A stretch of 64,000 nt of DNA, from positions 7,192,001 through 7,256,000 of the forward strand of contig CM119384.1 of the NCBI GenBank assembly GCA_051294905.1, in the 5' to 3' direction. Numbering within the stretch: the first letter of the stretch is position 1; each line of letters opens with the position of its first letter. The DNA comes from Botryllus schlosseri. Its lineage: Eukaryota. This document shows, piece after piece, positions 5,997 to 45,297 of the stretch. The notes below the pieces were generated by a model. The model was not told the origin of the DNA, ran no database searches, and saw only the letters and a program-made list of their open reading frames with translations. The translations under genes and the position numbers were made by a program.

Positions 5997-8900
5997 TTAC
6001 CAATCATTAGAGGGCAGTTCTCCATTAGAATGCCCGTAGAGACTTTGCCAGAGAGACAGGGACGAAGAAAATGAATGAAGGGAAAGTGCAGAAAGGAAGT
6101 TGACAAAAAGTTCACAGATAACAGAATCCTTTCCCCACTTCGATGCTTCGTATGCAATAGTCTTCGCTGCGTGTAGGAGTATCCATTGGCTTACCGGTTC
6201 AACAGTATTCCGTATCTGTGTAGCAATATTCATAAGCTGAGCTGCCTACAGTAGGATTATCAGCAGATAAATAACACCATTCAAAAAAATTGTGAGGGTC
6301 TTTCAAGCTCAATCAGCGTCTGTTTACTTGTTTTGACAACACTATGACCTAGCACTCCCATACAATATAGCAGGAATGCGGTTTGGATGGACATGTGCAC
6401 TGGGGTTATGACTTGGAAAATTTGCCTGTAGCAGGAATTATAATTATAATCGTTTTGTTCAATTCGAAAAAAATGTCCCGCACAAATTAACCTCAATTGG
6501 ACACTGGTCCAAATATAGAAAAAATTCACAATTTAAAGGTATTCTTTGCTACAAATTTAATCTTCATATACATGTCCTTTAGCACTTCTGGCAAAGTTCA
6601 TCCATCAATTTGACTTCCCTTTCTGTTATGTTAGTGCCAGGGACATCTACAACGGACATATCCGACTTCCAATGGGATTTTAAGGCACTTTATCGCTGCA
6701 GGACATTCGAGCGCGACGATAGCAGTAAATAAACTTTGGTATACTCTAGAGCCCGACCGATATTCAAAAGAAGTTGGATATACATAAGCACATTTTCAAA
6801 GCCTCAGAGCATTTATTTGAACATCTTTACAGCCATTGTTATACCTCAACATGAAATAATCTGGAAAGGCTACATTTGGACACTTGTTAAGTGCAAGTTA
6901 TGTGACATATATCAATATTCTCAGTCTAGCGGTCAAAGATTATAGTTTTTTGACTTCGTACCGCAATTATGTGACGTCACGAAAATTGCCGATAATTTTT
7001 CAGCTTCAATGGCCGATACCGATAATTCTTTTAAAGTGTGATATCGTCCTGATATTATCCGCGAACCGGTAATCGGTCGGGCTCCAGTATATTCCATCTA
7101 TGGACATCTGGTTAGAATACCAGGCTTCCTGACACGCATTTGCGATAAATAAGCATGATATCCCAAGAGTTACTCTACATCTGGGGACTTGGAAGTACGA
7201 AATTACACCCTTGAGCTCCATGTCGCATTGCGTAGAGATGGAAGTTTATGCTATTTGATTAATGACAATCTACTATCTTCTCTGAAAGAGCGGCATGCTC
7301 TGCACAGCACGTATATAAACTTGAAATCATCCCATTCATTTGAAATTCTGGCTTGGTGGATTGTACCAAGTTTTCGTAGTTTTAACCATATCATCTCCAA
7401 ATTTGTAGCTGAGAGTTGGATTTGTTGAGGATGTTGGATTGAAGAACTCTGATATAACCTTTAAGAACCGATAATATTATGTTGGCAACCAATGTACTGC
7501 GATTTATGGAAACTCTCGCTCATCATTGTAATTCGCAGATTCACAACGCCATTCCGACGCCCAGTATCACCAGATGCTGAGTCACATATGATATGACATT
7601 TTCAAATTTTCATCATATTCCTCTAATTGGTTTTCTAGACCACTGAAAATATGTTGAGTTGTTCTACTTTCGCCTTTTCAAACAACCAGTTGAATTTGTG
7701 TCAGACAATTAGAAATTATACGATATATACAGTCTACATCTAAAATCGAAATTAATAATTTATCAAATTATTTAATTTTGACTGTAAGCAAGAAAACGAT
7801 TGGATTAATTCAATCTGGCGAATCACAATTTACCAAAATACTATTTTAAATCTTCGCAACTGGAATTGTGTCTTTGGTGTGAACCAGATGATATGACTTT
7901 GAGCGGGGAGGGCCGTATAACTTTGGTGCACGAAAGCATGGACTCGAGTCAACAAAATCGACACTCAAATCGCTTTGCCCAGACGCAGTTACATAAGTAA
8001 ATTGTTCAAGCCTAGCACACAAAATACCTCCGAATATTTCGGTCCAAACAAATGCAGGTGTAGAAGCGTCGATGCTTCACTGCAGCTGATTCTCTAGAAA
8101 ATTAAGAAACTATTATCATTTAATGCCCACTGAAACAGTGACCATGCAGGGTTGTAATGTCTCGACTCGAGTCACTATTTTCTGATGACTCGACTTGACT
8201 CGAGTCAAAAAATAGTAAAGTAACCCCACTGTTGGGATTTCGTCTATTGGTACTGGTACTTGAAAATGCGACCAAAAAACTGCTAAAAGTGAGGAAAATT
8301 AGTATATTATTAATGCCGTAGGTTCGCTATCACCAAACAGAGTTATAAACAGTGTGTTTAGCAAGACTTTAACAGGAATCTGAGCAATCAACACAATGAC
8401 TTGGACTCGAGTCATAAAACCATGACTCGGACTCGACGCCCTGCTCGACATGACTCGAAAATGACTCAACTTGACTCGAGTCAAATCTATAAAAGTGAGA
8501 TTGACTTGTGACTCGGAGCCTTGTGACTTGGTTGGTTACAACCCTGCGACCATGTTCATACCATATTAGAATCTTCCTTTAACAGTAGCTTTACGAGCTG
8601 GAATACGAAAGCGTCGCCTATTTCTCCACCGATAGAACGGCTTTTGAGGGTGTTCTCTGAACAAGCTTGTTATAATTAGCGTAGGTACAGATTACAGAGT
8701 AAGGATATTCAAACTCACTATCAATGTTGAATATTTCACACAGTAAAAGACCGGCAGCCCATGCGTCTGATTTTCGATAGTCGAACACATACTGTGGGTC
8801 ACGCGTGCAGTTGACGATCTATTCACACAAATCAGTACATCAACTATATGCTGTTTGCGACTGCCTGTAATTCCCGGCGTACCTCTGGAGGTTGAACACT

Positions 8901-13778: not shown

Positions 13779-16700
13779 TCACTTTCGCCGTCCATGCGCA
13801 TTTTTACTACTCGGAGTGTTGCCTTTCTTGGGAGTAGATTCATCATCCGTTTTCTTATTCGCTTGACCGAGTTCCACTTTTCTCACTCTTTGAGCGAAAG
13901 ACAGCGAGCATATCGTCTCGCTAACATTTTTCTCCACCGGCGCAACCTGGACTACCATCAAGGTTTTGCTGTCCTTACTCAACGAGTCTTGTAGAAGATA
14001 AGTGAGCTTGGAATTACGGAATGGAACGTGAGATTGCTTAGCGCCAAGTGCTTGAATGACATCTCCCAAAGCCGACAGGCTTTTATTGATGTTCTGTGCC
14101 TCTTTCAGTCGGTCGCCAGAAGCTCCTGATTTGGAAACTCTCTCCGAGCCCGCCAGATCGATAAGATTGAGTTTACCGAACGATTTCGAACCTGTTGTTG
14201 TGTTAATTCCATTCACGTATATCATCAAAACTGCGTGCGACCTCGAGCTGTGTTCGTTCATGTTGGTAGTTGCGGTAGCCCGGTTCTTACGACCCAGCTT
14301 AAATAAATTGTTCACATCTTCCAGATTATGAACCGTTTTCTGCGTCAACCCAGGAACATATAGACTGCCGTCGGCATTCATTTTGATGTCCAGTTTTTCA
14401 TAAGCACTTGAAGACGTAAGCAAATCCTTCAATGTCTCATTGTAAATTTCTATCAAAGACACCGTAATTTCGTAAGTCCAATCGCCCGTCTTTTCTTGCA
14501 TGTCTTTAAAAAGATCGGACAACGCTCTTTGATTGATCCCGGGGTTATCAGCCGTGCCTTCCATTGTGTATGTTTTACCCGATCCGGTTTGGCCATACGC
14601 AAAAATGCATACGTGATATCCATCGATACACGACGTAACTAACGCTTTTACTTCCGAAAAGACTTGGTTTTGCGTGGAGTCGGGTTGAAATACTTTGTCC
14701 AGTTCGAAAAGAGTGCTACGTCCACGTTGTGAATTATGCACGTACATCACCCCGTCGTCGTCACGATCGTATGTGATCGTGTTCTTGGCTTGTGCTCCAG
14801 AGCCGTCTTCTGAAATTGCAGGACGCACGCGAGCAAACACCCTAATGTTTCCTTTTAGCTCCACGAGTTCGTTATGGTATTTTTTACGTAACATCATTTC
14901 TTTCTTGTATCGTCTAATCAGCTCCTTGCTATTCTCGTTAATATCCGATATCGAATCCAGAATTTTTTTCTCCGCTTGTCTTAGAGATTCTTCAATGAGA
15001 ATGGGGAATTGGGCACATTCCTTCTTCAAGTGCTGGTTCTCATTTGAGATTGAACGCAGTGAAGACAACAGATGACGGAGGGAGTAATGCATCTTATGGA
15101 GCTTTGAGCTGTACACACGGATTTCAGAATTGACAGACACGCGCACCTGCTCCATTTCGGTGGAATGGCGTCCGTTCAACTGCACAACTTCGCTCGCATG
15201 AGACGCTGTCAAAGCCGCTATTTGATTTTCCAAAGATTCCAAATGAGCCGACATTTCATTTTGCTTATCGTTAGCATTACCCAGATCTGTCTGGTAAGCT
15301 AGGTTTTGCGATTCAACGGTGCTTATGTTCATTTTTAGAGTCGCGTTTTCCCTTTGGAGTGCCGATAACTCGACTGTTGCGACATCGGACGCGCCGCTGA
15401 GGTCTTGTATTTGAGATTGTAACGCTCTGGTCGCGTTATCCGCCATGAGAAGTTTATGACTCAAGTCATCTTGTTTGCGCTTTTCTCGTGTAACTTGAGA
15501 TTCCAATTCGAGATTTCGAGATTTCAGAAGGGCAATTGAATTCTCTTTACTATCCATCTCAACATGCAATGACTCTATTTTTTTGGCGTTCGAGTCCATT
15601 TTCTCCGATAGATTCCGATTGAAATCTCTCGCTTTCAGCAAATTGTCCTCCGTCCTGTGAACTTTCTTTTCAAGTCTCTCGATAACAGATTCAAATTCTT
15701 GTTTCTGTATTTCGAAAGATTTCTCGGCGTGGCGCAGCTCCTCTTTCAATCCGGTCTCTGTTTGCTTCATTTTGTTTGTTAAAACATTGAAGTCGATCAT
15801 CGCTTCGTCTCTGGCGCGTTTTGAGGATGCCTTCAACTCCTGCAACTCTTGTTCAAGTTCCGACACTTTGCTCTTTTCAGTTTTCAAGCTCTTCTTTCCT
15901 TTCTCCACATTTTTCTTCTCTTTATTCAGCTCCGTCTCTTTGTGTCGCAGTTCGCAACGGAGGTTTGCTTCTTCCTCAAGGTGAGACGAATTTTTCTCGT
16001 CCAATTCCGCCCTCACAGTCTGGATTTCTTGTTCCGCGGAACCCAAATTATTCTTCAGTCTAGATATTTCATCATTTCTGCACCGTAACAATCTTTCCTT
16101 GTCATTTATGACCTTCTCCAAATTTACTATCTTATCTTTAGCAGAGCCAATTTCAGATTGCTGTTGAGTTGATTCTACTTCTATCACAGACTCGACAGTT
16201 TTCGTAACAACAACGGGAGGTCTATTTTCCAATTCGATTAAATCAGACGACTTCTTGTCCAAGTCCGACTTCAGACGCTCCATTTCAAGACGCATTTTTT
16301 TTTCATTGGATTTCCGCTCCTTCTCCATTCCTTTGATTTTCATTTCCAGTCGATCTAATTCATCCGAGAGCAAATCCTTATTTTCTCTCTCAGCGACAAG
16401 CTCTTTATTTCTATCTTCAAGTACGATTTTTACCTCTGATAACTCCTCTTTCAATCGTTTGACAAACCCATCGTCCAACGATGAAATTGTGGTTTTGGGA
16501 ACGTCGGGTTTCTGAATCGGGTTTTCATGAAGTTTTTGTAATTCCGACGATTTTTGCTCCAGGTTCTGTTCGAGATTGATGATTTTTTCGTTCAAACCAA
16601 ATTTTTCGTTTTGAAACGATTTAAGATTGTCAATTAGTTTTTGAACGCTGGATGTTTGAGGTATTTTTTCGATCGTCGGTTTGATTGGATTCCCTTTCAA

Positions 16701-17192
16701 AGTGTCTTCAAGCTCTCTGATTTTCATTTCATTTTCAAAAATGATGTCTTCCAAATTTACAATCAAATTATCCTTATCTTTCATGACATCTCTTTGTGCT
16801 TTTTTGAGTATTTTGATGTGCCGTTGGTATTTCAATTCTTCTCTTTGAAGGCGAGAACTTAGGATTCGCATGTCATCAGACAATTCCTTATTCCGCACTA
16901 ATAAATTATCCCTGTCCTTTTGCAACGAGGCATGTTCGGCTTTGGTTGGACCATCAATCATCTTCATTAAAGTATCGTCATCGTCACTGAAAGTAACACT
17001 GCTATCAGAGTCAGTCTCAGATTTAAAATCATCCACTTGATCCAGCCCAAGCTCTTCCATCAATAGTTGACTTTTCGATGGTGATGGTTTTGGACGGTCT
17101 AGTATGAGTTGAGGCTTTTTGTTGGCTTGCGATGTATCAACAAGTCTTTTAGGATAATTGAATTTGGGCTGAGATCTGGACAGTGCATCCAT
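13779..17192 (-). CDS. KIFC3: Kinesin-14 (KIFC3-like) C-terminal motor protein, intronless, 1137 aa
   Basis: Long coiled coil followed by ELKGNIRVFARVRP, P-loop YGQTGSGKT, switch I NEHSSRSH and switch II LIDLAGSER in one uninterrupted ORF. Confidence 0.92.
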   Translation of the reverse strand: MDALSRSQPKFNYPKRLVDTSQANKKPQLILDRPKPSPSKSQLLMEELGLDQVDDFKSETDSDSSVTFSDDDDTLMKMIDGPTKAEHASLQKDRDNLLVRNKELSDDMRILSSRLQREELKYQRHIKILKKAQRDVMKDKDNLIVNLEDIIFENEMKIRELEDTLKGNPIKPTIEKIPQTSSVQKLIDNLKSFQNEKFGLNEKIINLEQNLEQKSSELQKLHENPIQKPDVPKTTISSLDDGFVKRLKEELSEVKIVLEDRNKELVAERENKDLLSDELDRLEMKIKGMEKERKSNEKKMRLEMERLKSDLDKKSSDLIELENRPPVVVTKTVESVIEVESTQQQSEIGSAKDKIVNLEKVINDKERLLRCRNDEISRLKNNLGSAEQEIQTVRAELDEKNSSHLEEEANLRCELRHKETELNKEKKNVEKGKKSLKTEKSKVSELEQELQELKASSKRARDEAMIDFNVLTNKMKQTETGLKEELRHAEKSFEIQKQEFESVIERLEKKVHRTEDNLLKARDFNRNLSEKMDSNAKKIESLHVEMDSKENSIALLKSRNLELESQVTREKRKQDDLSHKLLMADNATRALQSQIQDLSGASDVATVELSALQRENATLKMNISTVESQNLAYQTDLGNANDKQNEMSAHLESLENQIAALTASHASEVVQLNGRHSTEMEQVRVSVNSEIRVYSSKLHKMHYSLRHLLSSLRSISNENQHLKKECAQFPILIEESLRQAEKKILDSISDINENSKELIRRYKKEMMLRKKYHNELVELKGNIRVFARVRPAISEDGSGAQAKNTITYDRDDDGVMYVHNSQRGRSTLFELDKVFQPDSTQNQVFSEVKALVTSCIDGYHVCIFAYGQTGSGKTYTMEGTADNPGINQRALSDLFKDMQEKTGDWTYEITVSLIEIYNETLKDLLTSSSAYEKLDIKMNADGSLYVPGLTQKTVHNLEDVNNLFKLGRKNRATATTNMNEHSSRSHAVLMIYVNGINTTTGSKSFGKLNLIDLAGSERVSKSGASGDRLKEAQNINKSLSALGDVIQALGAKQSHVPFRNSKLTYLLQDSLSKDSKTLMVVQVAPVEKNVSETICSLSFAQRVRKVELGQANKKTDDESTPKKGNTPSSKNAHGRRK

Positions 17193-26990: not shown

Positions 26991-26996
26991 ATACGG

Positions 26997-27537
26997 CAGG
27001 GTTGTAACCAAGTCACAAGGTTCTGAGTCACAAGTCAATCTCATTTTTATAGTTTTGACTCGAGTCAAGTCATTTTTAATTCACCACCGAGTCCAAGTCA
27101 CGGAGTTGATTCCGAGTCAGTGTTTTGACTCGAGTCCGAGTCCAAGTCATTGTGTTGACTGCTCTGTTTCCAGTTAAAGTCTTGTTAAACCCACTTTTTA
27201 TAACTCTGTTTGGTGATATCGAATGGTTCAGATTTATAATATGCTAATTTTCCTCACTTTTCACCGTTTCTGGTAGCATTTTAGGGTATTAGTACTGATA
27301 GACGAAATAATTATAGTGTGATAACTTTGCTATTCGAAATGTCAATGAAATGCCTGTCTTGGTAGATGCAGTCTCGAGTCGTATGACTTGGTTCGAGTCA
27401 TGCGCAATGACTCGAGTACAGGTCGAGTCAATACACAAACTGACTCGAGTCGAGGTCATTTTTCATTTTTTAGAAGATGACTCAAGACCAAAAATCGCAA
27501 CTCGAATCGAGTCATGACTCGAGTCATTACAATCCCG
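26997..27537. mobile_element. hAT-type MITE, GACTCGAGTC family, just upstream of the TERT coding exon
   Basis: TIR CAGGGTTGTAA / TTACAATCCCG; perfect 8-bp TSD ACATACGG (26989-26996, 27538-27545). Confidence 0.88.
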
Positions 27538-27618
27538 ACATACGGTGATTTTATGGTTAACGCTGGATTAGCTAATAATTATATTCCGTTTCGGTTACAG
27601 CTACAGGGTCTGTTTATC

Positions 27619-29835
27619 ATGCTGCAAATTCACAATTTTCTTTATAACTATGAGGATAAAGAACAATGGAATAAATTTTTCAAACCGAATAATATGCTCT
27701 GTGACCTTCAACTACCAAACAAATCCAATGCACGGAAAATGGTGAATTACATGTTTTTACCCAACACTGCTACAAAATCCAAAGAACAACCTCTACGCCG
27801 TGATGTTAAGAGTTTGAAGACGAGGCTTCCTCACCACCTACTAGGCTTTGTTGATGTCACATATCATATGTTGAATTGGTTGAAGATTGGATTGTTCAGG
27901 ACTCGGCTGAATCAAATCTGCGGTATCCCGGAACTGCGACCCGGAGACGAGATGCAGGAACTTGTGCGAGACCATACTCCTCCATCGAAAGTATATCGAT
28001 TTCTGAAGTCCGTAAGCTGTCTGTTGCTTCCAAAGAATCTATGGGGCGTTGAAGAAAATGAACGTTTATTTAACAAACTCATCTCTAAAGTTGTCAAGGC
28101 AAGAAAATATGACAAAATATACGTATATAGTATTATCAAAAATTTGGATTTATCCGCAATCAAAGTTTTAAAAGGTAGAGATAAGCAAAGCTTGATGCAA
28201 ACATTTTTAATGTGGTACATGGAAAACTTCTTATTTGAAGTTATAAGGAGATTTTTCTATGTTACAGAACATGGCGCTTTCAAGAACCGGTTGTTGTATT
28301 ACAGAGCTAGTGTGTGGAAAAAAATTGTTCAACGGACTATAAATCAACAGATGTCAAATGGCTTCTGGACCAAGTTAACAACGCTTGATGGGAAACATTT
28401 CTATTCAACATTAAACCATGTTGCTCTACCAGAAGAGTACTCGTTGTTTGATGCCCGTATTATCCCAAAAAAGACTGGATCAAGGATCATTCTTCGCAAT
28501 GCAATCGAGTTTGACAAGTGTACATCACAAGATCAATCTATCAACGACAGAGACTTACTGAAGCTGCTCACTACATTGTGGAGACTGCACCCTGACCTTA
28601 GAGCCTCTGGTGGATTCGGTCTGAAATCTATTCACAGCAGATGGAAAGATTTTCTGGGAGGTCTGCAAACTAGAAAATTGATCTACTTTGCAAAGGTTGA
28701 TATAAAACATTGCTTTGATTCGATTCCACACAAAAAACTCGTGGAAGTTCTTGAAATTCTCCTTAAAAATCATCCCCACTTCAGAATCCCGCTTTCAAAT
28801 TCGGTGAGATCTGCCTTTGGTACGCGGGATGTGTTGAAGGTCTTGAAGAAATCATTGAGTTGCTTTGTAATCAGATTGAAAAGCAAGTATTTTTTGAAAT
28901 CGACGGGCATACCACAAGGATGGAGACTGGCTTCGATGCTATGTAACTTGTTCTATGCCCATTTTGAGAATTCAGAACTACCCCATCTCGTGAGCAATTG
29001 CGATGGGGATGGCCATCATCACATTTTGATGAGAGTACTTGATGACTTTATGTTAGCAACTACTAACCTTGATGAAGCAGTGAAGTTTGTGAAAGATATG
29101 CATACGGGCTATGCTGATTATGGCATTGAAATCAATTCGTTCAAAACAATGACAAATTTTCCTTTTTCCTCCAGTTTTCAACATAGCGATCGCATCAAAG
29201 TGATCGGGCAGCATGAAGCATTTCCATGGTTTGGTCATTTATTTTTGCCTGCTAATAACCAATCTCACACATCGTCGTTCATTGGTTATGGAATAGGCAT
29301 TGAATTGGATCGCTATGGCCAATTGGAAAGCATGCGAGATTGTATTAGTATAAAAGGCAGCACTTCCCTCCCATCAAATATTGAGAGGACGATGGCTTCG
29401 ACTATAAAATTCCGCCTGTCCAAATTTTGTGTTGATCGTTTCATCAACTCGTGCTCCAGGATACATAGAAATGCTTTTGAATTATCATACTTGATCACAC
29501 TGCAGTGGATGTCGCGCAACTTTGGTGCGGATTGTAATTTGTCAATGCCAAAAGTCGCTGCTTTGAAACGTCTTCTAATACATCATGTTGCAGCACCTTT
29601 CCAAAAAAACAAAAGGAATGTGTACAATATGGGCATCAAATATGTTGTCCTGAAGGCGGGATTCAAAGCTTTGAATAGGTTCAAGTCTATCATTGGTAGG
29701 AACGTTTTGAAACTAGAAATGATGCAAATGAATGTGCTGCTACGCAAAAGCTATTCAACCAGGACAAAGCTAAGAATGCTGAAAAGAGTCACTGGATTCC
29801 GCCCTCTCTCTTTATGTAAAGTGAAGTTTACATGA
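27619..29835 (+). CDS. TERT: Telomerase reverse transcriptase, single coding exon, 738 aa from the first ATG after the splice acceptor
   Basis: TFLY-like NFLYNYEDKEQ, CP (LNQICG), QFP (HTPPSKVYRFL...LWG..N), T motif FFYVTE...KNRLLYYR..VW, motif 1/2 RIIPKKTGSRII, A KVDIKHCFDSIP, B' GIPQG, C RVLDDFM, D YGIEINSFKT, E FPWFG, plus a CTE. The ORF-track ATG at 27514 lies inside a MITE. Confidence 0.95.
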   Translation: MLQIHNFLYNYEDKEQWNKFFKPNNMLCDLQLPNKSNARKMVNYMFLPNTATKSKEQPLRRDVKSLKTRLPHHLLGFVDVTYHMLNWLKIGLFRTRLNQICGIPELRPGDEMQELVRDHTPPSKVYRFLKSVSCLLLPKNLWGVEENERLFNKLISKVVKARKYDKIYVYSIIKNLDLSAIKVLKGRDKQSLMQTFLMWYMENFLFEVIRRFFYVTEHGAFKNRLLYYRASVWKKIVQRTINQQMSNGFWTKLTTLDGKHFYSTLNHVALPEEYSLFDARIIPKKTGSRIILRNAIEFDKCTSQDQSINDRDLLKLLTTLWRLHPDLRASGGFGLKSIHSRWKDFLGGLQTRKLIYFAKVDIKHCFDSIPHKKLVEVLEILLKNHPHFRIPLSNSVRSAFGTRDVLKVLKKSLSCFVIRLKSKYFLKSTGIPQGWRLASMLCNLFYAHFENSELPHLVSNCDGDGHHHILMRVLDDFMLATTNLDEAVKFVKDMHTGYADYGIEINSFKTMTNFPFSSSFQHSDRIKVIGQHEAFPWFGHLFLPANNQSHTSSFIGYGIGIELDRYGQLESMRDCISIKGSTSLPSNIERTMASTIKFRLSKFCVDRFINSCSRIHRNAFELSYLITLQWMSRNFGADCNLSMPKVAALKRLLIHHVAAPFQKNKRNVYNMGIKYVVLKAGFKALNRFKSIIGRNVLKLEMMQMNVLLRKSYSTRTKLRMLKRVTGFRPLSLCKVKFT

Positions 29836-30229
29836 ATTTTTGGAGGTAAATGTATTGCCAAAAATAAATGGTTTATGCAATGGTGTTTCTCTGCTGTCAA
29901 AAGTTGAAATTGGGTTTTACATATTTAGATGTGAGAATATTAGACGCGAGTAGAGTCTATGACACATTATGTAGTGTGGTTTGTTTGAGATGATATTGAG
30001 ACTGGTATGGGGATAGTTTAGCATAGTGGTTCACAACCTGGGGGGGGGGCGAGGAAGCGGTCAACTGAAAAAAAATTCGCGCTATGGGCGATTTACCTTA
30101 AGTTCACGAGTGTTTATATATAGACCGAAGTACATATTTTTTAATTCTCTCATTAACAGTCATAACCTATCATGCCATCAAACAATCTGTTGGGGTTGCT
30201 AGCATCCCGGTTGGATTTTGTGATATTAC

Positions 30230-33181: not shown

Positions 33182-33442
33182 GTATATACCACACAAAAGT
33201 TGGTCCTGTCCCGTGATAAATGTCTGTCTGGGAATTCTTTCACCTTCACTAAATTACAGACTCTTTGAACTTCTTAAAGTTTCGAATAAAAGTTTGTTTT
33301 AGGGAATGTCACATTCTTTCATCAATTGAATTACTTCTTTTCATGACTTTTCAAGAGCTGACTGGATATTGACTGCACCACTTTCATCCAGCAATAACAG
33401 TCTTACTATATTTTGCATTTATGCTTTCTGTTACAGCTTAGT

Positions 33443-36418
33443 ATGGTTAGATTGAGTGTAGATCATAATCATCACACCCAGTCCAACTCTGCTGATATGA
33501 CGTGTAACAAGAAAGTTCATTGCCTGTTGAATCAAAGGCATATGTGTTCCTGTGAAGTTTGTATACACCGGTTATCAATGAACAAGTCAACTATCAACAG
33601 AAACGCTAACTGCGCCACCGTCTGGAGGATGTTGGAAGAAGAAATTGGAGATGAAAGAAAGGGCGATGTTCGGGATGAATATGAACCCCATCACAATGAA
33701 CACCCCCGAGGACAATTGTACCTGCCGATTTCTGTTTGCACCCAAGAACACATTCACCGTAAAAAATTTAAATTGATAAAGTTGATATCGTTGGGCTATG
33801 ACACTCAGTCGTCTGCTTTTGAGATTGCATCAACTCTGTTAGAAATATATTCCGAATTCATGAAGATGGTAGGCGAGTTGGCGCACTACGCCGCGTCACA
33901 ATGGGCCGACAAATGGTCCAGCTGGAGCAAAGCTCTCTTTCAAGGCGTGATATTCTACGAGCCGGTTTTGCATCAAGCGTTATCCGAAATTATAGTTCAA
34001 TTGAAAAAAGGTTCACGGGAGGGTCCGAAGTCCAAGGATTTCACGCAACTGCTGCAGCAATTTGTACATTTTTGTGACGAAATGTTACAACCGATTGAAA
34101 ACAAGCCATTACAGACCTTGATTAACGAGTGTTGGACCGATCATTCCACGGACCCAGAAAGACCGAATCGTTATTATCACTCTGTACCGCTCCACATGGA
34201 CGCGGCTTCAAACGAGCTGATTGCGCCGCCGAGTGGATACAACATTGTAACTCCGTTGCAAGGGGTTCCGTTACCAGTATTGTCGACGTCTGCTATACCC
34301 ACTCAAGACTGCACTAATTTGTTCGCGGAAATGCCTTTTGGCTCGTTTTCTTTTGCTCCGCAGGAGCATCAGAATTTCAGCTACTCCTTATCTCGACCGA
34401 ACCTTCTCAAGCACAACCCCATCACGTCGATGAAACACGTAGCAGCCATGATACACCCGCCCAGCATTCCGTCTGACGAATCTTCCATGGTGTCAAGCGA
34501 CGACGAAGTCCAAGTCACGTTGACGCATGATAATCTCCCGAGCGATTATTTCGGAGGCGATGACATGTCGAGTTCCACGAAAATTTTCAATCCTCTTGAC
34601 CATCGGTCGTTTCCGACAAGTCTAGGTGATCACAGCGTGATTTTTCACGAAGGTCAGGTGTTGTCGTCCGATAAAATACCGACGGACATGCGCGCTTTTC
34701 CTTTCGGAAAATTCAAGTGTGACAGAACGGCCGCCGCTGAGTCCTGCAAGAAATCAGAATCGGCGTATCAACAGCTGGATTTATCTGGCAGTCACATCAG
34801 CCCGACGTATCCGCCGAGGTTCGGTTTTTCTTCGCCTCAAATGCCACCTTTTATGACTCCGCCCGATTTTTCCGCACCCTCCATGCCGCTTTTTCCTCCC
34901 GCTACCGAAAATCCACTATGTTTCACATCGTCTCAGAAAGCGGCGGCCTCTCAAGAATTTATCAGTCAGAACAGCGGCGTGCTGAATTTGCTGGAAAAAG
35001 CGGCGGCACATCCCGCCATGTTTGGTAACCAGCCCAAGTTTCCGACGTTACGCAATTACACCGTTACCCCAACAACGACCACATCCACCAGCGTGCAAAA
35101 CAGGAAGAAACTAGTAGCCCACAGCAAGCTCCGGCACGGTCTGCAAGACAAGCAAACCGTCAAGGGCGACGGCGCCAAGTTGCAGCAGAATTTTTTGTGC
35201 CCAAATCATGCAGAGGGCTGTGTCGATTTCGGAAATTCCATCGCGACTAACCCACCGCATGAGCATCAGGAAGGCAGTAATGTAGACGGTAGTCCACAAC
35301 ACGAAACCGTCAAGTCGCAAGTTCCAGAAAATCACACTTTAATCAGCGACGCTCCTAACATGCCCACGGCCGGTATTTCGGATGAAACCTCAAACGATCC
35401 TTGTCATAAAGAATCGGATCCCTCCTCGTGTACTCGCGGCAGCGAATGTAAGATTACGGGTACTGGGGCTACTTTAGGTGGCGCCACAAAGTATTGCGAC
35501 TGTTGCTATTGCGAATTTTTCGGCAACGGCGGACCCACGGTGGCGCCGACGAGTAAAAACTACGCTGAAATGCGTGAAAGGTTACGGCAGAAATTGAAGC
35601 AGCGCAAGGATTACTCGCAAAACGGCAAGGCCGACTGTCACACGCACCACGGGAAGCCCGGGAACCATCACTATTCAGAGGAGCGACCGCTGGACGAAAT
35701 TCTGTCGTTCATCGAGGGGGATCAGGACCGGACGGGTTCCGGCGCGAGAAAGCCGCAAAAAAAGAACAAGGGGAAAGACGAAGAGAAAAAACGTGTCGAT
35801 AAACAGGATAACGTTGCTTCGGCGAAAAGCGAGATTCCGGCTGCGGTCGAAAAGACCGTTGTTCCGAGCGGTAATGCTAATAAACAAGTTCAAAACAAGA
35901 AAAAGAAAAAAAAGAAGAACTCGGAAGAGAGGAATTCCAGCCCAAACGCGACACCGGTCAATAGTACTGTGAAAAAAGATAATAACGCCGATGCCGCCAA
36001 AGGCAAGGTCGCGGATCACCCTGCTCCGTCCCACGCAAAGTCGAAAAACCATTCTAATCCCGCGGAGCTCAGAAACGGGCATGAATCGGGCGCACTCTCC
36101 AAATCTTCGCAGCCGGAGAAAAAGGCGAACGAAGAAACCAGCAACCGGAAAAACGATACGAAACGGAACACCGGCAACGCGGCCCGTGCGCAACAACAAC
36201 ACGCAGAGAAAAAGAACACGCAGTCGCACCATTCGGCGTCTTTCGACCACGTGTTTTTGCCGAAAGATGGGCGCGACGGGTCGGAAATGGACGACATCGA
36301 GAAGGAAATCGACAGCTTCAAGAGGTTCTGTCTCGACTCGCAGACGAAAGTCCGCGAAAAGAAGATCAAAGTGAATTGGAAGGACTTCTCCTTCAAGAAA
36401 GTGCACAGTTCCCATTAA
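33443..36418 (+). CDS. FAM193A: FAM193 family protein, single coding exon, about 990 aa
   Basis: YCDCCYCEFFGNGGP.VAPTSKNYAEMRERLR and the C-terminal VFLPKD...EMDDIEKEIDSFKRFCLDS...VNWKDF match FAM193. A splice acceptor lies at 33436, just before the ATG. Confidence 0.9.
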   Translation: MVRLSVDHNHHTQSNSADMTCNKKVHCLLNQRHMCSCEVCIHRLSMNKSTINRNANCATVWRMLEEEIGDERKGDVRDEYEPHHNEHPRGQLYLPISVCTQEHIHRKKFKLIKLISLGYDTQSSAFEIASTLLEIYSEFMKMVGELAHYAASQWADKWSSWSKALFQGVIFYEPVLHQALSEIIVQLKKGSREGPKSKDFTQLLQQFVHFCDEMLQPIENKPLQTLINECWTDHSTDPERPNRYYHSVPLHMDAASNELIAPPSGYNIVTPLQGVPLPVLSTSAIPTQDCTNLFAEMPFGSFSFAPQEHQNFSYSLSRPNLLKHNPITSMKHVAAMIHPPSIPSDESSMVSSDDEVQVTLTHDNLPSDYFGGDDMSSSTKIFNPLDHRSFPTSLGDHSVIFHEGQVLSSDKIPTDMRAFPFGKFKCDRTAAAESCKKSESAYQQLDLSGSHISPTYPPRFGFSSPQMPPFMTPPDFSAPSMPLFPPATENPLCFTSSQKAAASQEFISQNSGVLNLLEKAAAHPAMFGNQPKFPTLRNYTVTPTTTTSTSVQNRKKLVAHSKLRHGLQDKQTVKGDGAKLQQNFLCPNHAEGCVDFGNSIATNPPHEHQEGSNVDGSPQHETVKSQVPENHTLISDAPNMPTAGISDETSNDPCHKESDPSSCTRGSECKITGTGATLGGATKYCDCCYCEFFGNGGPTVAPTSKNYAEMRERLRQKLKQRKDYSQNGKADCHTHHGKPGNHHYSEERPLDEILSFIEGDQDRTGSGARKPQKKNKGKDEEKKRVDKQDNVASAKSEIPAAVEKTVVPSGNANKQVQNKKKKKKKNSEERNSSPNATPVNSTVKKDNNADAAKGKVADHPAPSHAKSKNHSNPAELRNGHESGALSKSSQPEKKANEETSNRKNDTKRNTGNAARAQQQHAEKKNTQSHHSASFDHVFLPKDGRDGSEMDDIEKEIDSFKRFCLDSQTKVREKKIKVNWKDFSFKKVHSSH

Positions 36419-37303
36419 TTCCGTTTCCCACGTACGCTGTTGAGTGATTTGCAACTCTGTGGGCTCGTATGCTTTTCCATTATCTTTGGCTACTTTTGTA
36501 GGGAAAGAACTAAATGACAGACTCTGCAGTTGTAAACTCGGAAAAGATCATGTGTACCGTAATATCAGAATAAAATCGGTGATATCAGGCTGTCGTTATA
36601 GAACTGAAAGCACTAACCTGTAAATGTCCTGACGGTCGCTGGTATGATCATTTCTTTTCTGAAAATCTTTTCAAGTTTACATGGTCTGTCATCTAGTGCT
36701 TGCCGTTTCTTGTTCTATTCTCTGTAGCTCTGTCTAAGATCTTCTGTAATGTCGCTTCTGGACTGCGACAATGTTTCATTCAAAAATTATGTTGGTAATT
36801 GTAGATATCTTGATATGTAGAACTTTACTAAATCTAGTTTGATCAGGATTGTGAAGTTGAATTCAAGTTTGTCCTCGTGTGGCTTTCTTTCGGAATTGTC
36901 GTTGATGTTTGTGTTACTTTCTTCTCAGCGTGAAGCTCATTTGCCGTATCTTGTTTCAGAAATGGGGCATAGCTATGTTATTCTTGTTTAGAAATGTTAT
37001 CGCTTTTGTTATGATGGCTGTGATTTGATGCGATGACTGTTGAGATGATGTGGCTGCTAGATTTCACGCATTGAGATCTTTTTCTGTGTCCTTGTTGATA
37101 TACCTCGTGGGATGAATGGTAGATCGATAGGCTGCCTGCAAATGTCATTGTCTCTTTTTAGTCCATCTGAGAATGTTGGCCTTCCGTTGTTTTAATAGAG
37201 TTTTATATTATGATATTAATGACTTTTAATTGCGCCTTGTGTATTTTAGCTCGGAGGTATTAGCCAAATATTGTGATGCCGAGAAATTGATTTTTTTTCC
37301 CTA

Positions 37304-40300: not shown

Positions 40301-43300
40301 CGTCAGGGGGCAGGGGCAATCGTCAAGTAGGGAATTGCAAAGAACATTGTATATCAACTTCAACAACCATATCGGCAGTCTTGTGTTTGTCCATTAAAAA
40401 CGTCGTTGGCACACCAAACAATGTCATTATGACAAGCCAGACGAGTTTTTTTTATTATAGCTGTTCATCACATTAACCGTCAGGGGTCACAGAATAAAAA
40501 AATGGACTACGAGCGAAAAAATTTGGAAGCCATGGTGTATTATTGTGCATTACTAGTTAACCATGTGACGTGGTAACAGCATATTGATCCATTATATCAG
40601 TCTTGGACTAGTAAGCCCATCGATGAATCAAAGGTGGTGACATTTCACGAATTGCAACTATAGATTTGAAGTTGATAAATTTTGTAGTTTCATAATTTAG
40701 GTATCCTTGTCGGCGAATTTCTAACATTCCGATTTGCAGTGCAGAATCGAGTTGTTGCAAATTACCACCTTGTGATCATAGTTATGTACTTCGAGGCACT
40801 TGCTGCATGCTTGTCTACCATTTTATGCTGCGTGAAATTGTTTTGAACTGCTTTCAAGTTACAAATACTGATCGCCGCGGCAAAGGGGGCCTTCGCCCTT
40901 CAGTCCGCTCTACAACTTGCAATCACGTAATCGGTGTTGATTGCCAGCATTTTGAAAGTAATGAAGCGTGTGCTCGAACAGCATGGCCGTGAACCTAAAC
41001 TATCACTCAACTTCCGTGCTTATATCACCATAGTGGCTATGTTGATTGTGTGAGTCGACCAGGCCCGATTTAACTTGTTGATGATGATATTGGGTCCTAG
41101 AATATTCATTGCAACTCTCAATAGTGTGCCATGAATTGATTTAGTAATGGACATGCCATCTGCTGTGCATGTTGTGCAAGTTCGCAGATTATTGATACTT
41201 CATTCTGGATCGCTTCACAATGGTTCTTATGCTGTGTCAGGATGAATAAAATTCAATTGACTTTAAATGTTATCAACAAGTCAAATGATAATCTATCATA
41301 AATAGGTTTTCGATAGCTACCATGAAAGTCACTCGCAATGGTGCTTCTGTAGAATCATGTCGAAAGCTTCATATCATTGTTCTATTAGCACTATGAATTT
41401 GGATTGGTATTTTCTTGCCTAAAATCTTTGCGTGTATAACTGTATTACAGCAGTGATACGCAGTGGTCATGTATCATCATTCAAAGTATGGTTGTATCAC
41501 AAGTCACCTGAAAAATCTCTACCAAAGGCTCATGCCATCTCATTTGAATTTTTCATACCAATCAAGTCAATAGCGCGTATCATGTATGAGATTTCATTGG
41601 AATACACTTTGTGTCATCAACTTTTGACAATAAAAAAGATCATACAATCGATGCTTTCAGTGTGAACTGGGCGCAAACAACCATTCTGTCGGCAATGATC
41701 ACTCAATCTTAACGAACACAAACACAGGAGAACCATCCGAACAGCCAAACTCTGAAAATGCACCGTCGATGTATTTTAAGGAGAGGAATATGTTCACGAG
41801 TACGCCCACTAGGAATCAGGTGTATTCTACTAATGGTAAGCATTGATTTACATTTTTGATGATTTTACTGGTCCGACTCGCAAGCGATGAAAAACTAATG
41901 ATTCCGTCCAGTGACCAAAACTGAGTTTGACGTGCCTAGTTCAAGCTATCATGTTACTGGAATATAAAATATTAGTGTGACAATAGATATTAATGCGATT
42001 TTTACAATGTGACTGAAATCCATTGTTTTCCCTTATGCACCCAATGTTAATATATTATTGAATAGTAGTCTATATTCGTATTGAAATGAACCGGAATATT
42101 TTCAGCTGACACTCGTCATGGGTAATCATCAGCAATTAGTAGAGAATTGGAAAGAACATTGTCTATCAATAATCGTATCTCAAAATACGACGTCACCAGC
42201 ATGAAATTTCGAATAATATATTGCATAGTATATTGCAGGATGTGTTTAGCATATAGAATAAAGAGACACTTTGATGTTAGATAAAACAGTTAATAAGTGA
42301 GAGACCATTTCAGTTATGGATTCTGCTACATCGCAAAGCAAATGCAGCATAAGGCATTGATTCATCATACATCAGTTATTGCACATCGCTATTTTCATCT
42401 ACAAAAAAAATACGAGATGATAAAAAGTTGCATTACGTCTCGTATGGCATTTACAGTGAGAATTTTGAGCAAAAGATCTTCCCAAAATGTCTTAACCGTC
42501 AGATACGAAAAACTCGCAAGTTCCAGTTCCACACAGGAGCATTCATCCATCGAATTGGCTTCAGCACTGAACGATAGCAGTGGCAACCAGCAAGAGGACT
42601 CTGTCCAGCCTGTCGAAGATAATTCCGGTAACCAATTGATGTCATTTCTTGGCGTGAATTATCGCACACTAAATTGGTATTGCCGACCAGTATTTAACCG
42701 ACACTGTAGGACTATAGATAAATAACCTACGGATAGATACTCAACACCCGTCGTCACGCTGTCTTGCCCGGAGGAAATTTGTGCTCAGCAATCTGAACGC
42801 AGCAGAATTGCTAATCCCATAGCTGACGACCTGAACGCTCAAATTAAATAGAGTGGATCTTATTTGAAAGGTACTGTCGCGTTGATTCTGAAAATATTAC
42901 ATTAAAAGTTCATTAAGGGAATGGCACCAGCTCGAAATAGCCTTCAAAGCAGTGTTGGGATGACTCGAGTCATGACTTGACTCGAGTCAGACTCGAGTCA
43001 ACTTTTTCGTATGACTTGACTTGACTCGAGTCACTTCGGAAAAATGACTTGACTTGACATGACTCGGAGCTTCAAAAATGTGCATTGACTCGTGACTCGG
43101 AGCAAAATTTACAAGTCAATTTCAAGTCATTAACTAAGCGGTGTCGAATAAATCACTGTATCTTGTTGATGTTCGGATTGTTCGAGATACGCCGGTGTCA
43201 CTTGTGAGAACAACCAGTCATTCACTGATTGTAAGTTACAAGGTTCCTCCATTGTTCGATCACAAATAAATTGACCGCAATGTAGAAAATTATTCTAAAT

Positions 43301-45297
43301 ATCAATGTGTCTCTGTTTCTTAGACGGCCCAATGCTTACATTGCCCAGTGCTTACATTTACCAATTCTCTTGTATGATTTAAATCGAACGAATACTGGGT
43401 GCGTTTATATTCTCATGGAAGTGTAGATAAGTAGTGTAGGCTATTGTACCATATCAATTTGTTTCAACTTCTCGAAGCTTCGTATTAGGTCCTATATTTT
43501 GACTGATAAGAACTGACTGTAGTATGGAGCTGTACAGTTACTCACGTACTTTATTAGCAGTTCTACGTGTGCGTGAGGGTTATACCGTCTTTTTGCATGC
43601 ATATTTAACGAGATATTCGTTATTCGATTAAGATAAATGATTAATTAATCTGTCTTTCACACAGCTAGCAAAATGTAATGACTTTGAATCATCACTCATA
43701 CTTCGAAAATTCAATTTGACTTGAATTGTGACTTGACTCGTGACTTGACTTGACTTGACTCGACTTGACTCGAGTCACCTCCAAAAAATGAGTGACTTGA
43801 CTTGACTCGAGTCACCTTTGAAAATCGATTGACTTGACTTGACTCGAGTCAAAATCTGCAATGACTCGAGATGACTCGTGACTCGAAGGTAGTGACTTGA
43901 TCCCAACACTGCTTCAAAGTCTGAAAATGGGCATTGTTGCTAACGATGGCAGAGACCAGAACAATGGACCTTGCATGGTTGCGATTGTTTACAACAATGC
44001 AGATTTTCAGACTTTGAGGTGAATTTTGAGTGGGTTCAGCTGCCCTGATCAGATTTTAATGTATATTTTCGAAATCAGTGCGACAGTAGCTTTCAAATAA
44101 GATCAACATTATTCAATTTGAGCGCTCAGGTCATCAGCTATGAGATTAGCAGTTATGCTGCGTTCAGATTGCTGAGCAGTAATTTCCTTCGAGCAAGCAA
44201 GCGTGACGACGGGTGTTGCGTATCTATCCGTAAGTTAGTTATCTATAGTAGGACTATTAATTCCAATTCCAATTTGACATTATAATAGAATATATCAATC
44301 AACGAAATCGCATTAAAAAGAGAAACATCTGCCAAAATCGAGTTTGTGGTTTCGACAGGACTTAGCCTTTTAGAAACTTCAATAGAACTGTACCAGAAGT
44401 AACCGTACTAACAGCTCTGTAGTATCAAAAAGACAGTCTCAGCAAATTTCTCATTAAATTCAAGTTACAAACGTTTGTTTTGAGTTGCATGCTTTTGTCG
44501 TAATTTGATTTGTGCAAGTTTACTGGTCCCAAAATTAGTTTTGAAATTTTACCTGTCAGTTCGCAAGCTGAAAAGTTTGGCGTAACATGTTCCGAATCTC
44601 TGTGTGTATTTTTCATTCAGGAGTGAAATACTCTAGGTGCTTCCAGAAAGTACGATGCAAATATCTGCAAGCTGCTGGTTTTGTCAGGTAATAAGTGTCA
44701 TGCTCTATCCGATTCTTTTCAGAGAACGCTGTTCCGACGCAGCAGCTGACCCACGGCCATCAATCCATCTCGTGGTTCGTGCCACTGAACGGATCACAGA
44801 ACGAGCCGCTTCGTCATTCCATTATAGAGACTACTCGTAATGATGCGAGTACCAAGGTCTGATAATAATCCCGTTCCTGTGTAAACATATTATATAAACA
44901 AGAAGCTTTTTGGCAATTGGCCGCACAGGACAATGATGGTACAGCTTCAGATAAAAACAGTGACAAGACAAGACTCGGCAAAGATAAACACGTTCTATTA
45001 TGTGAATTGCATGAAGACAATGTTGCGGCACTCACGTCGAGGTCAAGCTCCTGTAAGTCTGATGGCACCGCGGAAGACATTCCGCTAATGGAAAAATGTT
45101 CTAATCTGTCCAATTCAGCACCCGGCTCTGTTGTCATAAAAAGGTCTCGATTGACTTCGGCGTTATCGGAGGACCGGGGATTTTCTGATTCAACAATATG
45201 TTGCCCGCGATCTCAGTCCTTTTCGCCCGATTATTCGAATGCTTGGAAGCAGAGGGAGGATAGGCCCGTTTTATTTTTAGGCACAGGAGTCAAGTAG
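37304..45297 (+). CDS. Uncharacterised single-pass membrane protein, 6 exons, 448 aa
   Basis: Exons 37304-37623, 39204-39381, 41661-41835, 42457-42627, 44723-44856 and 44929-45297 all join in phase. TM VLLVAVLIICFITLASVFAICFCMI is followed by RRYCKRRR and a long low-complexity tail. Confidence 0.75.
40270..40365 (-). mobile_element. Degenerate PLE 3' end with a mutated hammerhead
   Basis: Homologous to about 25170-25260; GAAA is changed to GGAA. Confidence 0.6.
42065..42215 (-). mobile_element. Degenerate PLE 3' end with a mutated hammerhead
   Basis: Homologous to about 25130-25280; CTGACGA is changed to ATGACGA. Confidence 0.65.
42713..44247. mobile_element. Non-autonomous P-superfamily element with long TIRs
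   Basis: Ends TATAGA / TCTATA, roughly 190-bp imperfect inverted arms, perfect 7-bp TSD GTAGGAC (42706-42712, 44248-44254). Confidence 0.85.
42950..43911. mobile_element. hAT-type MITE rich in GACTCGAGTC/TGACT, nested in the P-type element
   Basis: TIR CAGTGTTGGGAT / ATCCCAACACTG; perfect 8-bp TSD CTTCAAAG. Confidence 0.9.

What the first reader, a model, noticed from the sequence alone, without database searches (positions are those of the whole stretch)
27619..29835. Minimal telomerase: TERT apparently lacking the TEN domain and most of the IFD/TRAP
The ORF starts a few residues before the TFLY motif. I found no TEN-like coding sequence between it and KIFC3 (17192); that interval is almost all TEs plus short non-coding gaps. 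The motif A Asp to motif B' GIPQG spacing is 69 aa, versus about 118 in human TERT. TEN and TRAP are reported to be present or absent together (both are missing in Tribolium TERT), so the two losses support each other. A TEN-less, TRAP-less TERT in a chordate-like genome would be an independent loss, raising questions about processivity, TPP1-type recruitment, or a TEN supplied in trans.
Basis: partly seen in the sequence, partly recalled or inferred. Interest (0 to 1): 0.8.

Follow-up and report, generated by a model that had tools for sequence, protein, structure and literature searches.

The report
Sea-squirt telomerase lacking TEN and TRAP
This is the intact, weakly expressed telomerase catalytic gene of a sea squirt; it lacks the N-terminal TEN domain and the TRAP insert, as every other tunicate telomerase examined here does, and the TEN loss was already published for Ciona.

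Summary
One uninterrupted ORF (27514-29835, + strand; likely start 27619) encodes a true TERT. It has the Pfam domains Telomerase_RBD and RVT_1, human TERT is the best solved relative, and the AlphaFold2 model (pLDDT 89) matches the human TERT ring at TM 0.84. The protein starts just before a TFLY-like motif. The motif A Asp to GIPQG spacing is 69 aa, against a median of 120 in 151 TERTs.

A 190-position TEN profile found TEN in 116 of about 170 TERTs. It found none in the window's six frames and none in 11 tunicate TERTs.

Styela, Ciona (two species), Phallusia, Clavelina and four unnamed relatives all begin at or within about 40 residues of the same Met and have 55-73 aa spacings. They form one clade with 100% SH-aLRT support on a quick tree. 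So this is a tunicate-wide state, and loss of the GQ/TEN motif in Ciona is published (Lai 2017, citing Li 2007). I found no paper noting the TRAP co-loss in tunicates.

The gene looks functional: the catalytic residues are conserved, polymorphisms run 16 synonymous to 8 non-synonymous, RNA-labelled contigs cover it, and a relative shares the downstream neighbour. A short 5' exon or a trans-splice site just upstream of the ATG was not resolved. No other TERT is noted so far in this genome.

The parts
27619..29835 (+). TERT coding sequence, single exon, 738 aa plus stop (preferred gene model)
   Evidence: ORF. Pfam Telomerase_RBD 2.9e-25 and RVT_1 3.3e-14. Human TERT 1.5e-42. Met36 aligns with the start Met of P0001, Styela P0002 and P0003. 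RNA-labelled contigs cover 27665-29865 with no joints.
27514..27618 (+). In-frame upstream extension of the ORF (35 codons), probably untranslated. It holds the AG acceptor-like sites at 27601 and 27607.
   Evidence: In-frame stop at 27478. 27500-27527 belongs to a GACTCGAGTC-type repeat with copies elsewhere in the window. Contig depth falls from about 700 to about 3 between bins 27431-27617 and 27618-27804. No relative has residues that align here.
27619..27756 (+). N-terminal TFLY/CP2-like segment (aa 1-46), directly at the protein start
   Evidence: Aligned to hTERT 327-368. Tunicate consensus LPxWxxLYS...ARKLVxxIF. Block pLDDT is 87-94 over aa 1-50, except 69 for aa 11-20.
27988..28347 (+). 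Core of the telomerase RNA-binding domain (Pfam PF12009 match), including the T motif FFYVTE
   Evidence: aa 159-278 of the 773-aa ORF. T216 and W233 are invariant in 72-115 TERTs.
28699..28701 (+). Motif A catalytic Asp (D361)
   Evidence: Invariant column in alignments A3 and A4. Position.
28702..28905 (+). Shortened insertion in fingers (68 aa): two helices (371-383 and 402-414) joined by an 18-aa loop where TRAP lies in human TERT
   Evidence: Spacing of 69 aa against a median of 120. The HMMER alignment skips hTERT 740-808 against 20 query residues. Secondary structure and a pLDDT dip at 395-397.
28906..28920 (+). Motif B' GIPQG
29041..29046 (+). Motif C catalytic Asp pair (D475, D476)
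   Evidence: Invariant columns.
29371..29832 (+). C-terminal extension (thumb), helical, aa 585-738
   Evidence: Helices 585-733 in the model. The whole model superposes on human TERT. The Pfam thumb family PF21399 is not matched in any tunicate TERT.
29863..29868 (+). AATAAA polyadenylation signal 28 nt after the stop codon
   Evidence: Sequence. The longest contig ends at 29865 and depth is about 0 over 29862-30048.

Best explanation
This is the single functional telomerase reverse transcriptase gene of an ascidian on the Styela side of the tunicate tree. It encodes only the TERT ring (TRBD, RT and CTE). The protein begins at a TFLY/CP2-like motif, and its insertion in fingers is reduced to two helices and a short loop. 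The TEN domain, the TEN-TRBD linker and the TRAP motif were lost together before the sampled ascidian lineages diverged, so the state is inherited rather than specific to this genome. The enzyme presumably copies a telomerase RNA template in the usual way, because all RT and T-motif residues are conserved (shown). By analogy with Spodoptera telomerase, which also lacks TEN and TRAP, DNA retention during translocation and recruitment to telomeres would rely on the ring's own surfaces and on accessory proteins, not on a TEN-TRAP-TPP1 interface (inferred). In this lineage the gene has also lost all its coding introns; Ciona intestinalis has at least 15 coding exons.
For: Identity as TERT: Pfam Telomerase_RBD and RVT_1; human TERT is the best PDB sequence hit at 1.5e-42; the AlphaFold2 model has pLDDT 89.3 and pTM 0.90 and matches the human telomerase catalytic core at TMq 0.84, and Tribolium TERT at TMt 0.72.

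Catalytic competence: T216, R280, K284, R289, D361, D475, D476 and K509 fall in invariant columns across 72-115 TERTs.

TEN absent: the TEN profile detects 116 of about 170 TERTs but none of 11 tunicate TERTs, and nothing in six-frame translations of the window, L001, L002 or L003. tblastn was also negative.

Clade-wide state: Styela clava, Ciona intestinalis, C. savignyi, Phallusia mammillata, Clavelina lepadiformis and four unnamed relatives start within about 0-40 residues of the same motif. Their A-to-B' spacings are 55-73, against 88 or more in all 139 others. The group is one side of a branch with 100% SH-aLRT support.

Start codon: in-frame stops lie 1 codon (L003) and 8 codons (L001) upstream of the equivalent Met.

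Functional gene: 16 synonymous and 8 non-synonymous variants in contigs from other samples, where 21% synonymous is expected by chance. Contigs from RNA-labelled runs cover the ORF but not the unique flanks, and stop at the AATAAA. FAM193 lies downstream both here and in the 49%-identical relative L001.

Literature: Ciona lacks the GQ motif (PMC5405514). Tribolium and Spodoptera TERT lack both TEN and TRAP, and the Spodoptera enzyme is active (PMC12920920, PMC11892584).
Against: The 5' end of the mRNA was not captured. RNA-labelled contigs begin at 27665 and 27696, and the raw RNA reads sampled held almost none from the gene. A short upstream coding exon spliced to 27601 or 27607, comparable to the 28-aa exon 1 of Ciona intestinalis, is therefore not excluded.

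Only 64 kb of this genome could be searched, so a second TERT or a separate TEN gene elsewhere is not ruled out directly. TEN is poorly conserved, and a very divergent one could escape the profile. The search for a stand-alone TEN was of low sensitivity (2726 candidates).

The X1 and X2 runs are only presumed to be RNA. No telomerase activity data were examined for this species.
Confidence: 0.85

Rival explanations
1. The gene model is truncated: TEN-encoding exons lie further upstream, or outside the window, and are spliced to the acceptor-like AG at 27601 or 27607.
For: Acceptor-like AGs sit 12-18 nt upstream of the ATG. A similar tttcag lies 6 nt before the ATG in L001. Ciona intestinalis has a small coding exon upstream of its TFLY exon. 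The 5' end of the transcript was not observed.
Against: No TEN signal appears anywhere in the 64 kb window or in the 10 kb upstream of Ciona TERT. Gene models from five named tunicate species, from independent annotation efforts, all lack TEN. L003 has a stop codon immediately before its start Met. The extra residues in Ciona (about 35 aa) and Clavelina do not match the TEN profile. The co-loss of TRAP, TEN's binding partner, argues that TEN is truly gone (PMC11892584). The AG may instead be a spliced-leader trans-splice site, which is common in tunicates (my own knowledge, not tested here).
Confidence: 0.05
2. This is a derived, intronless retrocopy of TERT, and a full-length, intron-containing TERT with TEN and TRAP exists elsewhere in the genome.
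For: The gene has a single exon, whereas Ciona TERT has at least 15 coding exons. Its neighbours differ from those of Ciona TERT. Only one window of the genome was examined.
Against: The same single-exon gene with the same FAM193 neighbour exists in a relative that is only 49% identical. The multi-exon Ciona gene has the same TEN-less, TRAP-less architecture. No TEN-bearing TERT clusters with tunicates among 1565 TERT hits. Purifying selection and conserved catalytic residues are evident. No other TERT is noted in 771 scanned windows of this genome, which is weak evidence.
Confidence: 0.04
3. TEN function is supplied in trans by a separate small protein, a split TERT.
For: Nothing direct. Human TEN can act in trans in reconstitution experiments (my own knowledge).
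Against: A profile search with 26 TEN domains for proteins of about 110-350 aa returned only two fish TERT fragments and nothing from tunicates whose proteomes are in the database. The TRAP surface that TEN docks on is deleted. The only TEN-like fragment in the window is an 11-bit, 35-aa match.
Confidence: 0.03

Closest known systems
Ciona intestinalis and Ciona savignyi TERT (Li, Yates and Chen 2007; discussed in Lai et al. 2017, PMC5405514)
   Same: Same clade. No GQ/TEN. The protein begins near the TFLY-like motif. The A-to-B' spacing is short (73 aa against 69 here). All TRBD and RT motifs are present.
   Different: Only 25-27% identical. The Ciona proteins carry a low-complexity insert of about 100 aa after the TFLY-like motif and are 843-906 aa long. 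C. intestinalis has at least 15 coding exons and different neighbours, whereas this gene has one exon.
Styela clava TERT-like protein (P0002, 803 aa) and the unnamed relative P0001 (727 aa, locus L001)
   Same: Closest relatives at 36% and 49% identity. The start Met is identical. The IFD is short (70 and 55 aa). In L001 the gene has a single exon and the same FAM193 neighbour.
   Different: P0001 has an even shorter IFD, lacking the loop 384-401 region.
Tribolium castaneum and Spodoptera frugiperda TERT (PDB 3DU5, 6USR; PMC11892584)
   Same: TERT ring only, with neither TEN nor TRAP. The fold matches at TMt 0.70-0.72. These enzymes show that this architecture can be an active telomerase.
   Different: An independent loss in arthropods. 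Sequence identity is about 14%. The tunicate protein keeps a vertebrate-like TFLY/CP2 segment and resembles the human TERT ring more closely (TMq 0.84 against 0.58-0.60).
Human TERT (PDB 7TRD, 7QXA)
   Same: Best sequence and structure match for the TRBD, RT and CTE. The TFLY-like motif aligns to hTERT 327-368.
   Different: Human TERT has TEN (1-195), a linker, and a TRAP insert of about 70 aa (hTERT 740-808) that is replaced here by about 20 residues.

Membership tests
Telomerase reverse transcriptase (TERT) | Telomerase-specific RNA-binding domain with the T motif (FFYxTE) and CP/QFP regions | tested here: met
   PF12009 at 2.9e-25, above the gathering score. FFYVTE is present and T216 is invariant.
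Telomerase reverse transcriptase (TERT) | RT motifs 1, 2, A, B', C, D and E with the catalytic Asp triad | tested here: met
   PF00078 at 3.3e-14. R280, K284, R289, D361, GIPQG 430-434, D475, D476 and K509 lie in invariant or nearly invariant columns.
Telomerase reverse transcriptase (TERT) | Closed TRBD-RT-CTE ring fold | tested here: met
   AF2 model with pTM 0.90. TMq 0.84 to human TERT and TMt 0.72 to Tribolium TERT.
Telomerase reverse transcriptase (TERT) | Templated telomeric repeat synthesis with an integral RNA | not testable with these tools
Canonical four-domain TERT (vertebrate, fungal and ciliate type) | N-terminal TEN domain (GQ motif) | tested here: not met
   The TEN profile HMM and tblastn were negative for the protein and the window. 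The protein starts at the TFLY-like motif.
Canonical four-domain TERT (vertebrate, fungal and ciliate type) | TRAP motif within the insertion in fingers | tested here: not met
   A-to-B' spacing is 69 aa against a median of 120. hTERT 740-808 is unmatched. The model has only two helices and an 18-aa loop there.
Tunicate TEN-less TERT clade | Groups with Ciona, Styela, Phallusia and Clavelina TERT and shares the start position and the short IFD | tested here: met
   One clade at 100% SH-aLRT on a quick IQ-TREE run, midpoint-rooted for drawing only.

The most novel reading that the evidence does not exclude
Tunicates as a whole, the sister group of vertebrates with TTAGGG telomeres, run a ring-only telomerase. 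TEN, the linker and TRAP were deleted together while the vertebrate-type TFLY/CP2 element was kept. Processivity and telomere recruitment must then use a mechanism unlike the vertebrate TEN-TRAP-TPP1 interface. The TRAP co-loss and its extent across stolidobranch, phlebobranch and aplousobranch ascidians do not appear in the papers I could search. In this lineage the gene has additionally become intronless.
Probability: 0.8. Interest if true: 0.4.

Novelty: new member of a known kind. Interest (0 to 1): 0.3.

Why it matters
TEN and TRAP are considered essential for repeat-addition processivity and TPP1-mediated recruitment in human telomerase. A natural chordate lineage that dispenses with both gives a second example, independent of insects, of how a ring-only TERT can maintain telomeres. 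That lineage includes long-lived, regenerating colonial animals. It would be a useful comparison for identifying compensating accessory factors and the tunicate telomerase RNA. For this scan the practical result is that the finding is real but inherited. The TEN loss is already published for Ciona, so the gene is an ordinary member of its clade.

Tried and rejected
- **tblastn of non-tunicate N-termini.** Ten non-tunicate TERT N-termini were run against the window. They hit only the TERT TRBD itself.
- **TEN profile against six-frame pieces.** The TEN profile HMM was run on all six-frame pieces of the window, L001, L002 and L003. The best window hit is 42297-42722, 11 bits over 35 aa around an NVL motif. 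Pfam gives only a sub-threshold WPP match there. I rejected it as chance.
- **Stand-alone TEN search.** A profile of 26 TEN domains was searched against the 5.8-billion-protein set. It returned only two fish TERT fragments. This is a weak negative.
- **Reads.** The two raw RNA runs sampled held almost no TERT reads. The two sets of Logan contigs did not reach the 5' end, so the acceptor question stayed open.
- **Li, Yates and Chen 2007.** The paper is not held in the library. I rely on Lai et al. 2017 for its content. My recollection that Ciona TERT has few introns was contradicted, and I dropped it.
- **First structure job.** A 72-row alignment was used instead.
- **Careful tree.** The careful tree search did not finish within the time limit. 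The quick tree is reported.
- **Long ORF start.** I rejected the ATG at 27514 as the start because its first codons lie in a dispersed repeat and no relative aligns there.

Full report
**What is there.** The window holds one uninterrupted ORF on the + strand, 27514-29835, 773 aa. Pfam finds Telomerase_RBD (2.9e-25) and RVT_1 (3.3e-14), both above their gathering scores. The best solved relative by sequence is human TERT at 1.5e-42. ORF residues 146-423 align to hTERT 447-739, residues 444-589 to hTERT 809-946, and a weak stretch at residues 38-84 to hTERT 327-368, the TFLY/CP2 region. About 20 residues of this protein therefore stand where hTERT has residues 740-808, which is the TRAP part of the insertion in fingers.

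Numbering from that Met, the motif A Asp is residue 361 and GIPQG starts at residue 430, a spacing of 69 aa. Among 151 TERTs in which both motifs could be located, the median spacing is 120. The twelve shortest values (55-73) are this protein and eleven tunicate or tunicate-like sequences. The next value is 88.

**Which start codon.**
- The first codons of the long ORF lie in a dispersed GACTCGAGTC-type repeat. 26996-27486 and 27500-27527 have copies elsewhere in the window.
- Contig depth in the RNA-labelled runs falls from hundreds to about 3 between the bins ending at 27617 and starting at 27618.
- No relative has residues that align to the 35-codon extension.
- P0001, Styela clava P0002 and P0003 begin with a Met that aligns exactly with Met36.

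I therefore take 27619 as the start.

**Is TEN hidden upstream?**
- tblastn with ten non-tunicate TERT N-termini found nothing outside the ORF.
- I built a 190-position TEN profile from 56 TEN domains. It recognises TEN in 116 of about 170 TERT representatives. It recognises none of 11 tunicate TERTs, and no six-frame piece of the window, of the relative's locus L001, of the Ciona locus L002 (with 10 kb upstream) or of L003.
- The best window piece is 42297-42722, 11 bits over 35 aa. It has no supporting Pfam hit, and I take it as chance.
- In-frame stops lie 1 codon (L003) and 8 codons (L001) before the equivalent Met.

**The state is clade-wide.** The close homologues are all tunicate TERTs: Styela clava, Ciona intestinalis, C. 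savignyi, Phallusia mammillata, Clavelina lepadiformis and four unnamed sequences. All start within about 0-40 residues of the TFLY-like motif and all have the short IFD. The starfish Acanthaster and the vertebrates have TEN and a long IFD. On a quick maximum-likelihood tree the ten TEN-less, short-IFD rows form one side of a branch with 100% SH-aLRT support. The window groups with P0001, and then with Styela. One loss on the tunicate stem explains the data.

**Prior literature.**
- Lai et al. [quoted passage not shown]
- Tribolium and Spodoptera TERT are described as lacking both TEN and TRAP. The Spodoptera enzyme is active, and processive when reconstituted in cells (PMC12920920, PMC11892584).
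- The 2025 paper lists nematodes and arthropods as TEN-less but does not mention tunicates.
- I found no paper describing TRAP loss in tunicates. That part may be a small addition to the record.

**Structure.** AlphaFold2 on a 72-row alignment gave mean pLDDT 89.3 and pTM 0.90. Between motif A and B' the model has helix 371-383, an 18-residue loop with the only pLDDT below 50 (residues 395-397), and helix 402-414. These correspond to IFD-A and IFD-C without TRAP. Foldseek against the PDB ranks the human telomerase catalytic core first (TMq 0.84, TMt 0.67). Tetrahymena, yeast, Candida and Tribolium TERT follow, the last at TMt 0.72.

**Is the gene functional?**
- The catalytic and T-motif residues sit in invariant columns.
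- Of 24 variants seen inside the ORF in contigs from other samples, 16 are synonymous and 8 are not. Chance would give 21% synonymous.
- Contigs from two RNA-labelled runs tile 27665-29865 without joints. Unique flanks have zero depth. Coverage ends at an AATAAA 28 nt after the stop.
- The next gene downstream encodes a FAM193-type protein both here and in L001, at 58% identity.

**Not settled.**
- The mRNA 5' end was not captured. The acceptor-like AGs at 27601 and 27607, and a tttcag 6 nt before the ATG in L001, may mark a spliced-leader trans-splice site or a short 5' exon like the 28-aa exon 1 of Ciona. Neither would supply a TEN domain.
- Only this window of the genome was searched.
- The search for a stand-alone TEN protein returned two fish TERT fragments and nothing from tunicates, but it was a low-sensitivity search.
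- Earlier notes of the scan list no other TERT in this genome.

**Side observation.** Ciona intestinalis TERT is split into at least 15 coding exons over 9 kb and has different neighbours. This gene and its orthologue in L001 each have a single exon. The neighbouring kinesin-14-like gene (1137 aa) and the FAM193-like gene (1001 aa) are also single ORFs.

**Verdict.** The claim of novelty is reduced to a new member of a published TEN-less tunicate TERT clade. The clade-wide TRAP co-loss is a modest, apparently unreported corollary.

Noticed in passing
window 13779-17192 (-), 27619-29835 (+), 33413-36418 (+): Three consecutive long genes are each a single uninterrupted ORF: a kinesin-14-like gene (1137 aa), TERT (738 aa) and a FAM193-like gene (1001 aa). 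Ciona intestinalis TERT has at least 15 coding exons. This suggests intron loss or cDNA-mediated replacement in this lineage, shared with the relative L001.
   Followed up: partly
window 27595-27618; L001 440-454: Acceptor-like AG sites lie 12-18 nt upstream of the TERT ATG (ttacag/ctacag). In L001 a tttcag lies 6 nt upstream of the ATG. These may be spliced-leader trans-splice acceptors, which are typical of tunicates. The reads sampled did not reach this position.
   Followed up: partly
window 26996-27527, with copies at 8161-8547, 42960-43023, 43767-43912 and 61769-62263: A dispersed repeat family rich in GACTCGAGTC motifs lies directly upstream of TERT. It creates the spurious 35-codon N-terminal extension of the ORF. 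It is very abundant in the RNA-labelled contig sets, with depths in the thousands.
   Followed up: partly
window 42297-42722 (+): A 142-aa open stretch has an 11-bit, 35-aa match to the conserved NVL segment of the TEN profile (whole-search E 0.036). Pfam gives only a sub-threshold WPP hit. I judged it to be chance.
   Followed up: yes
window 29371-29832: The Pfam TERT thumb family PF21399 is matched by bird and fungal TERTs but by none of the tunicate TERTs. The predicted C-terminal extension is nonetheless a confident helical thumb. The tunicate CTE is therefore strongly diverged in sequence.
   Followed up: no
window 34001-36000: GC content rises to 0.50 inside the FAM193-like ORF, against about 0.39 elsewhere in the window. 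A 259-aa antisense ORF (35675-36454) overlaps it.
   Followed up: no
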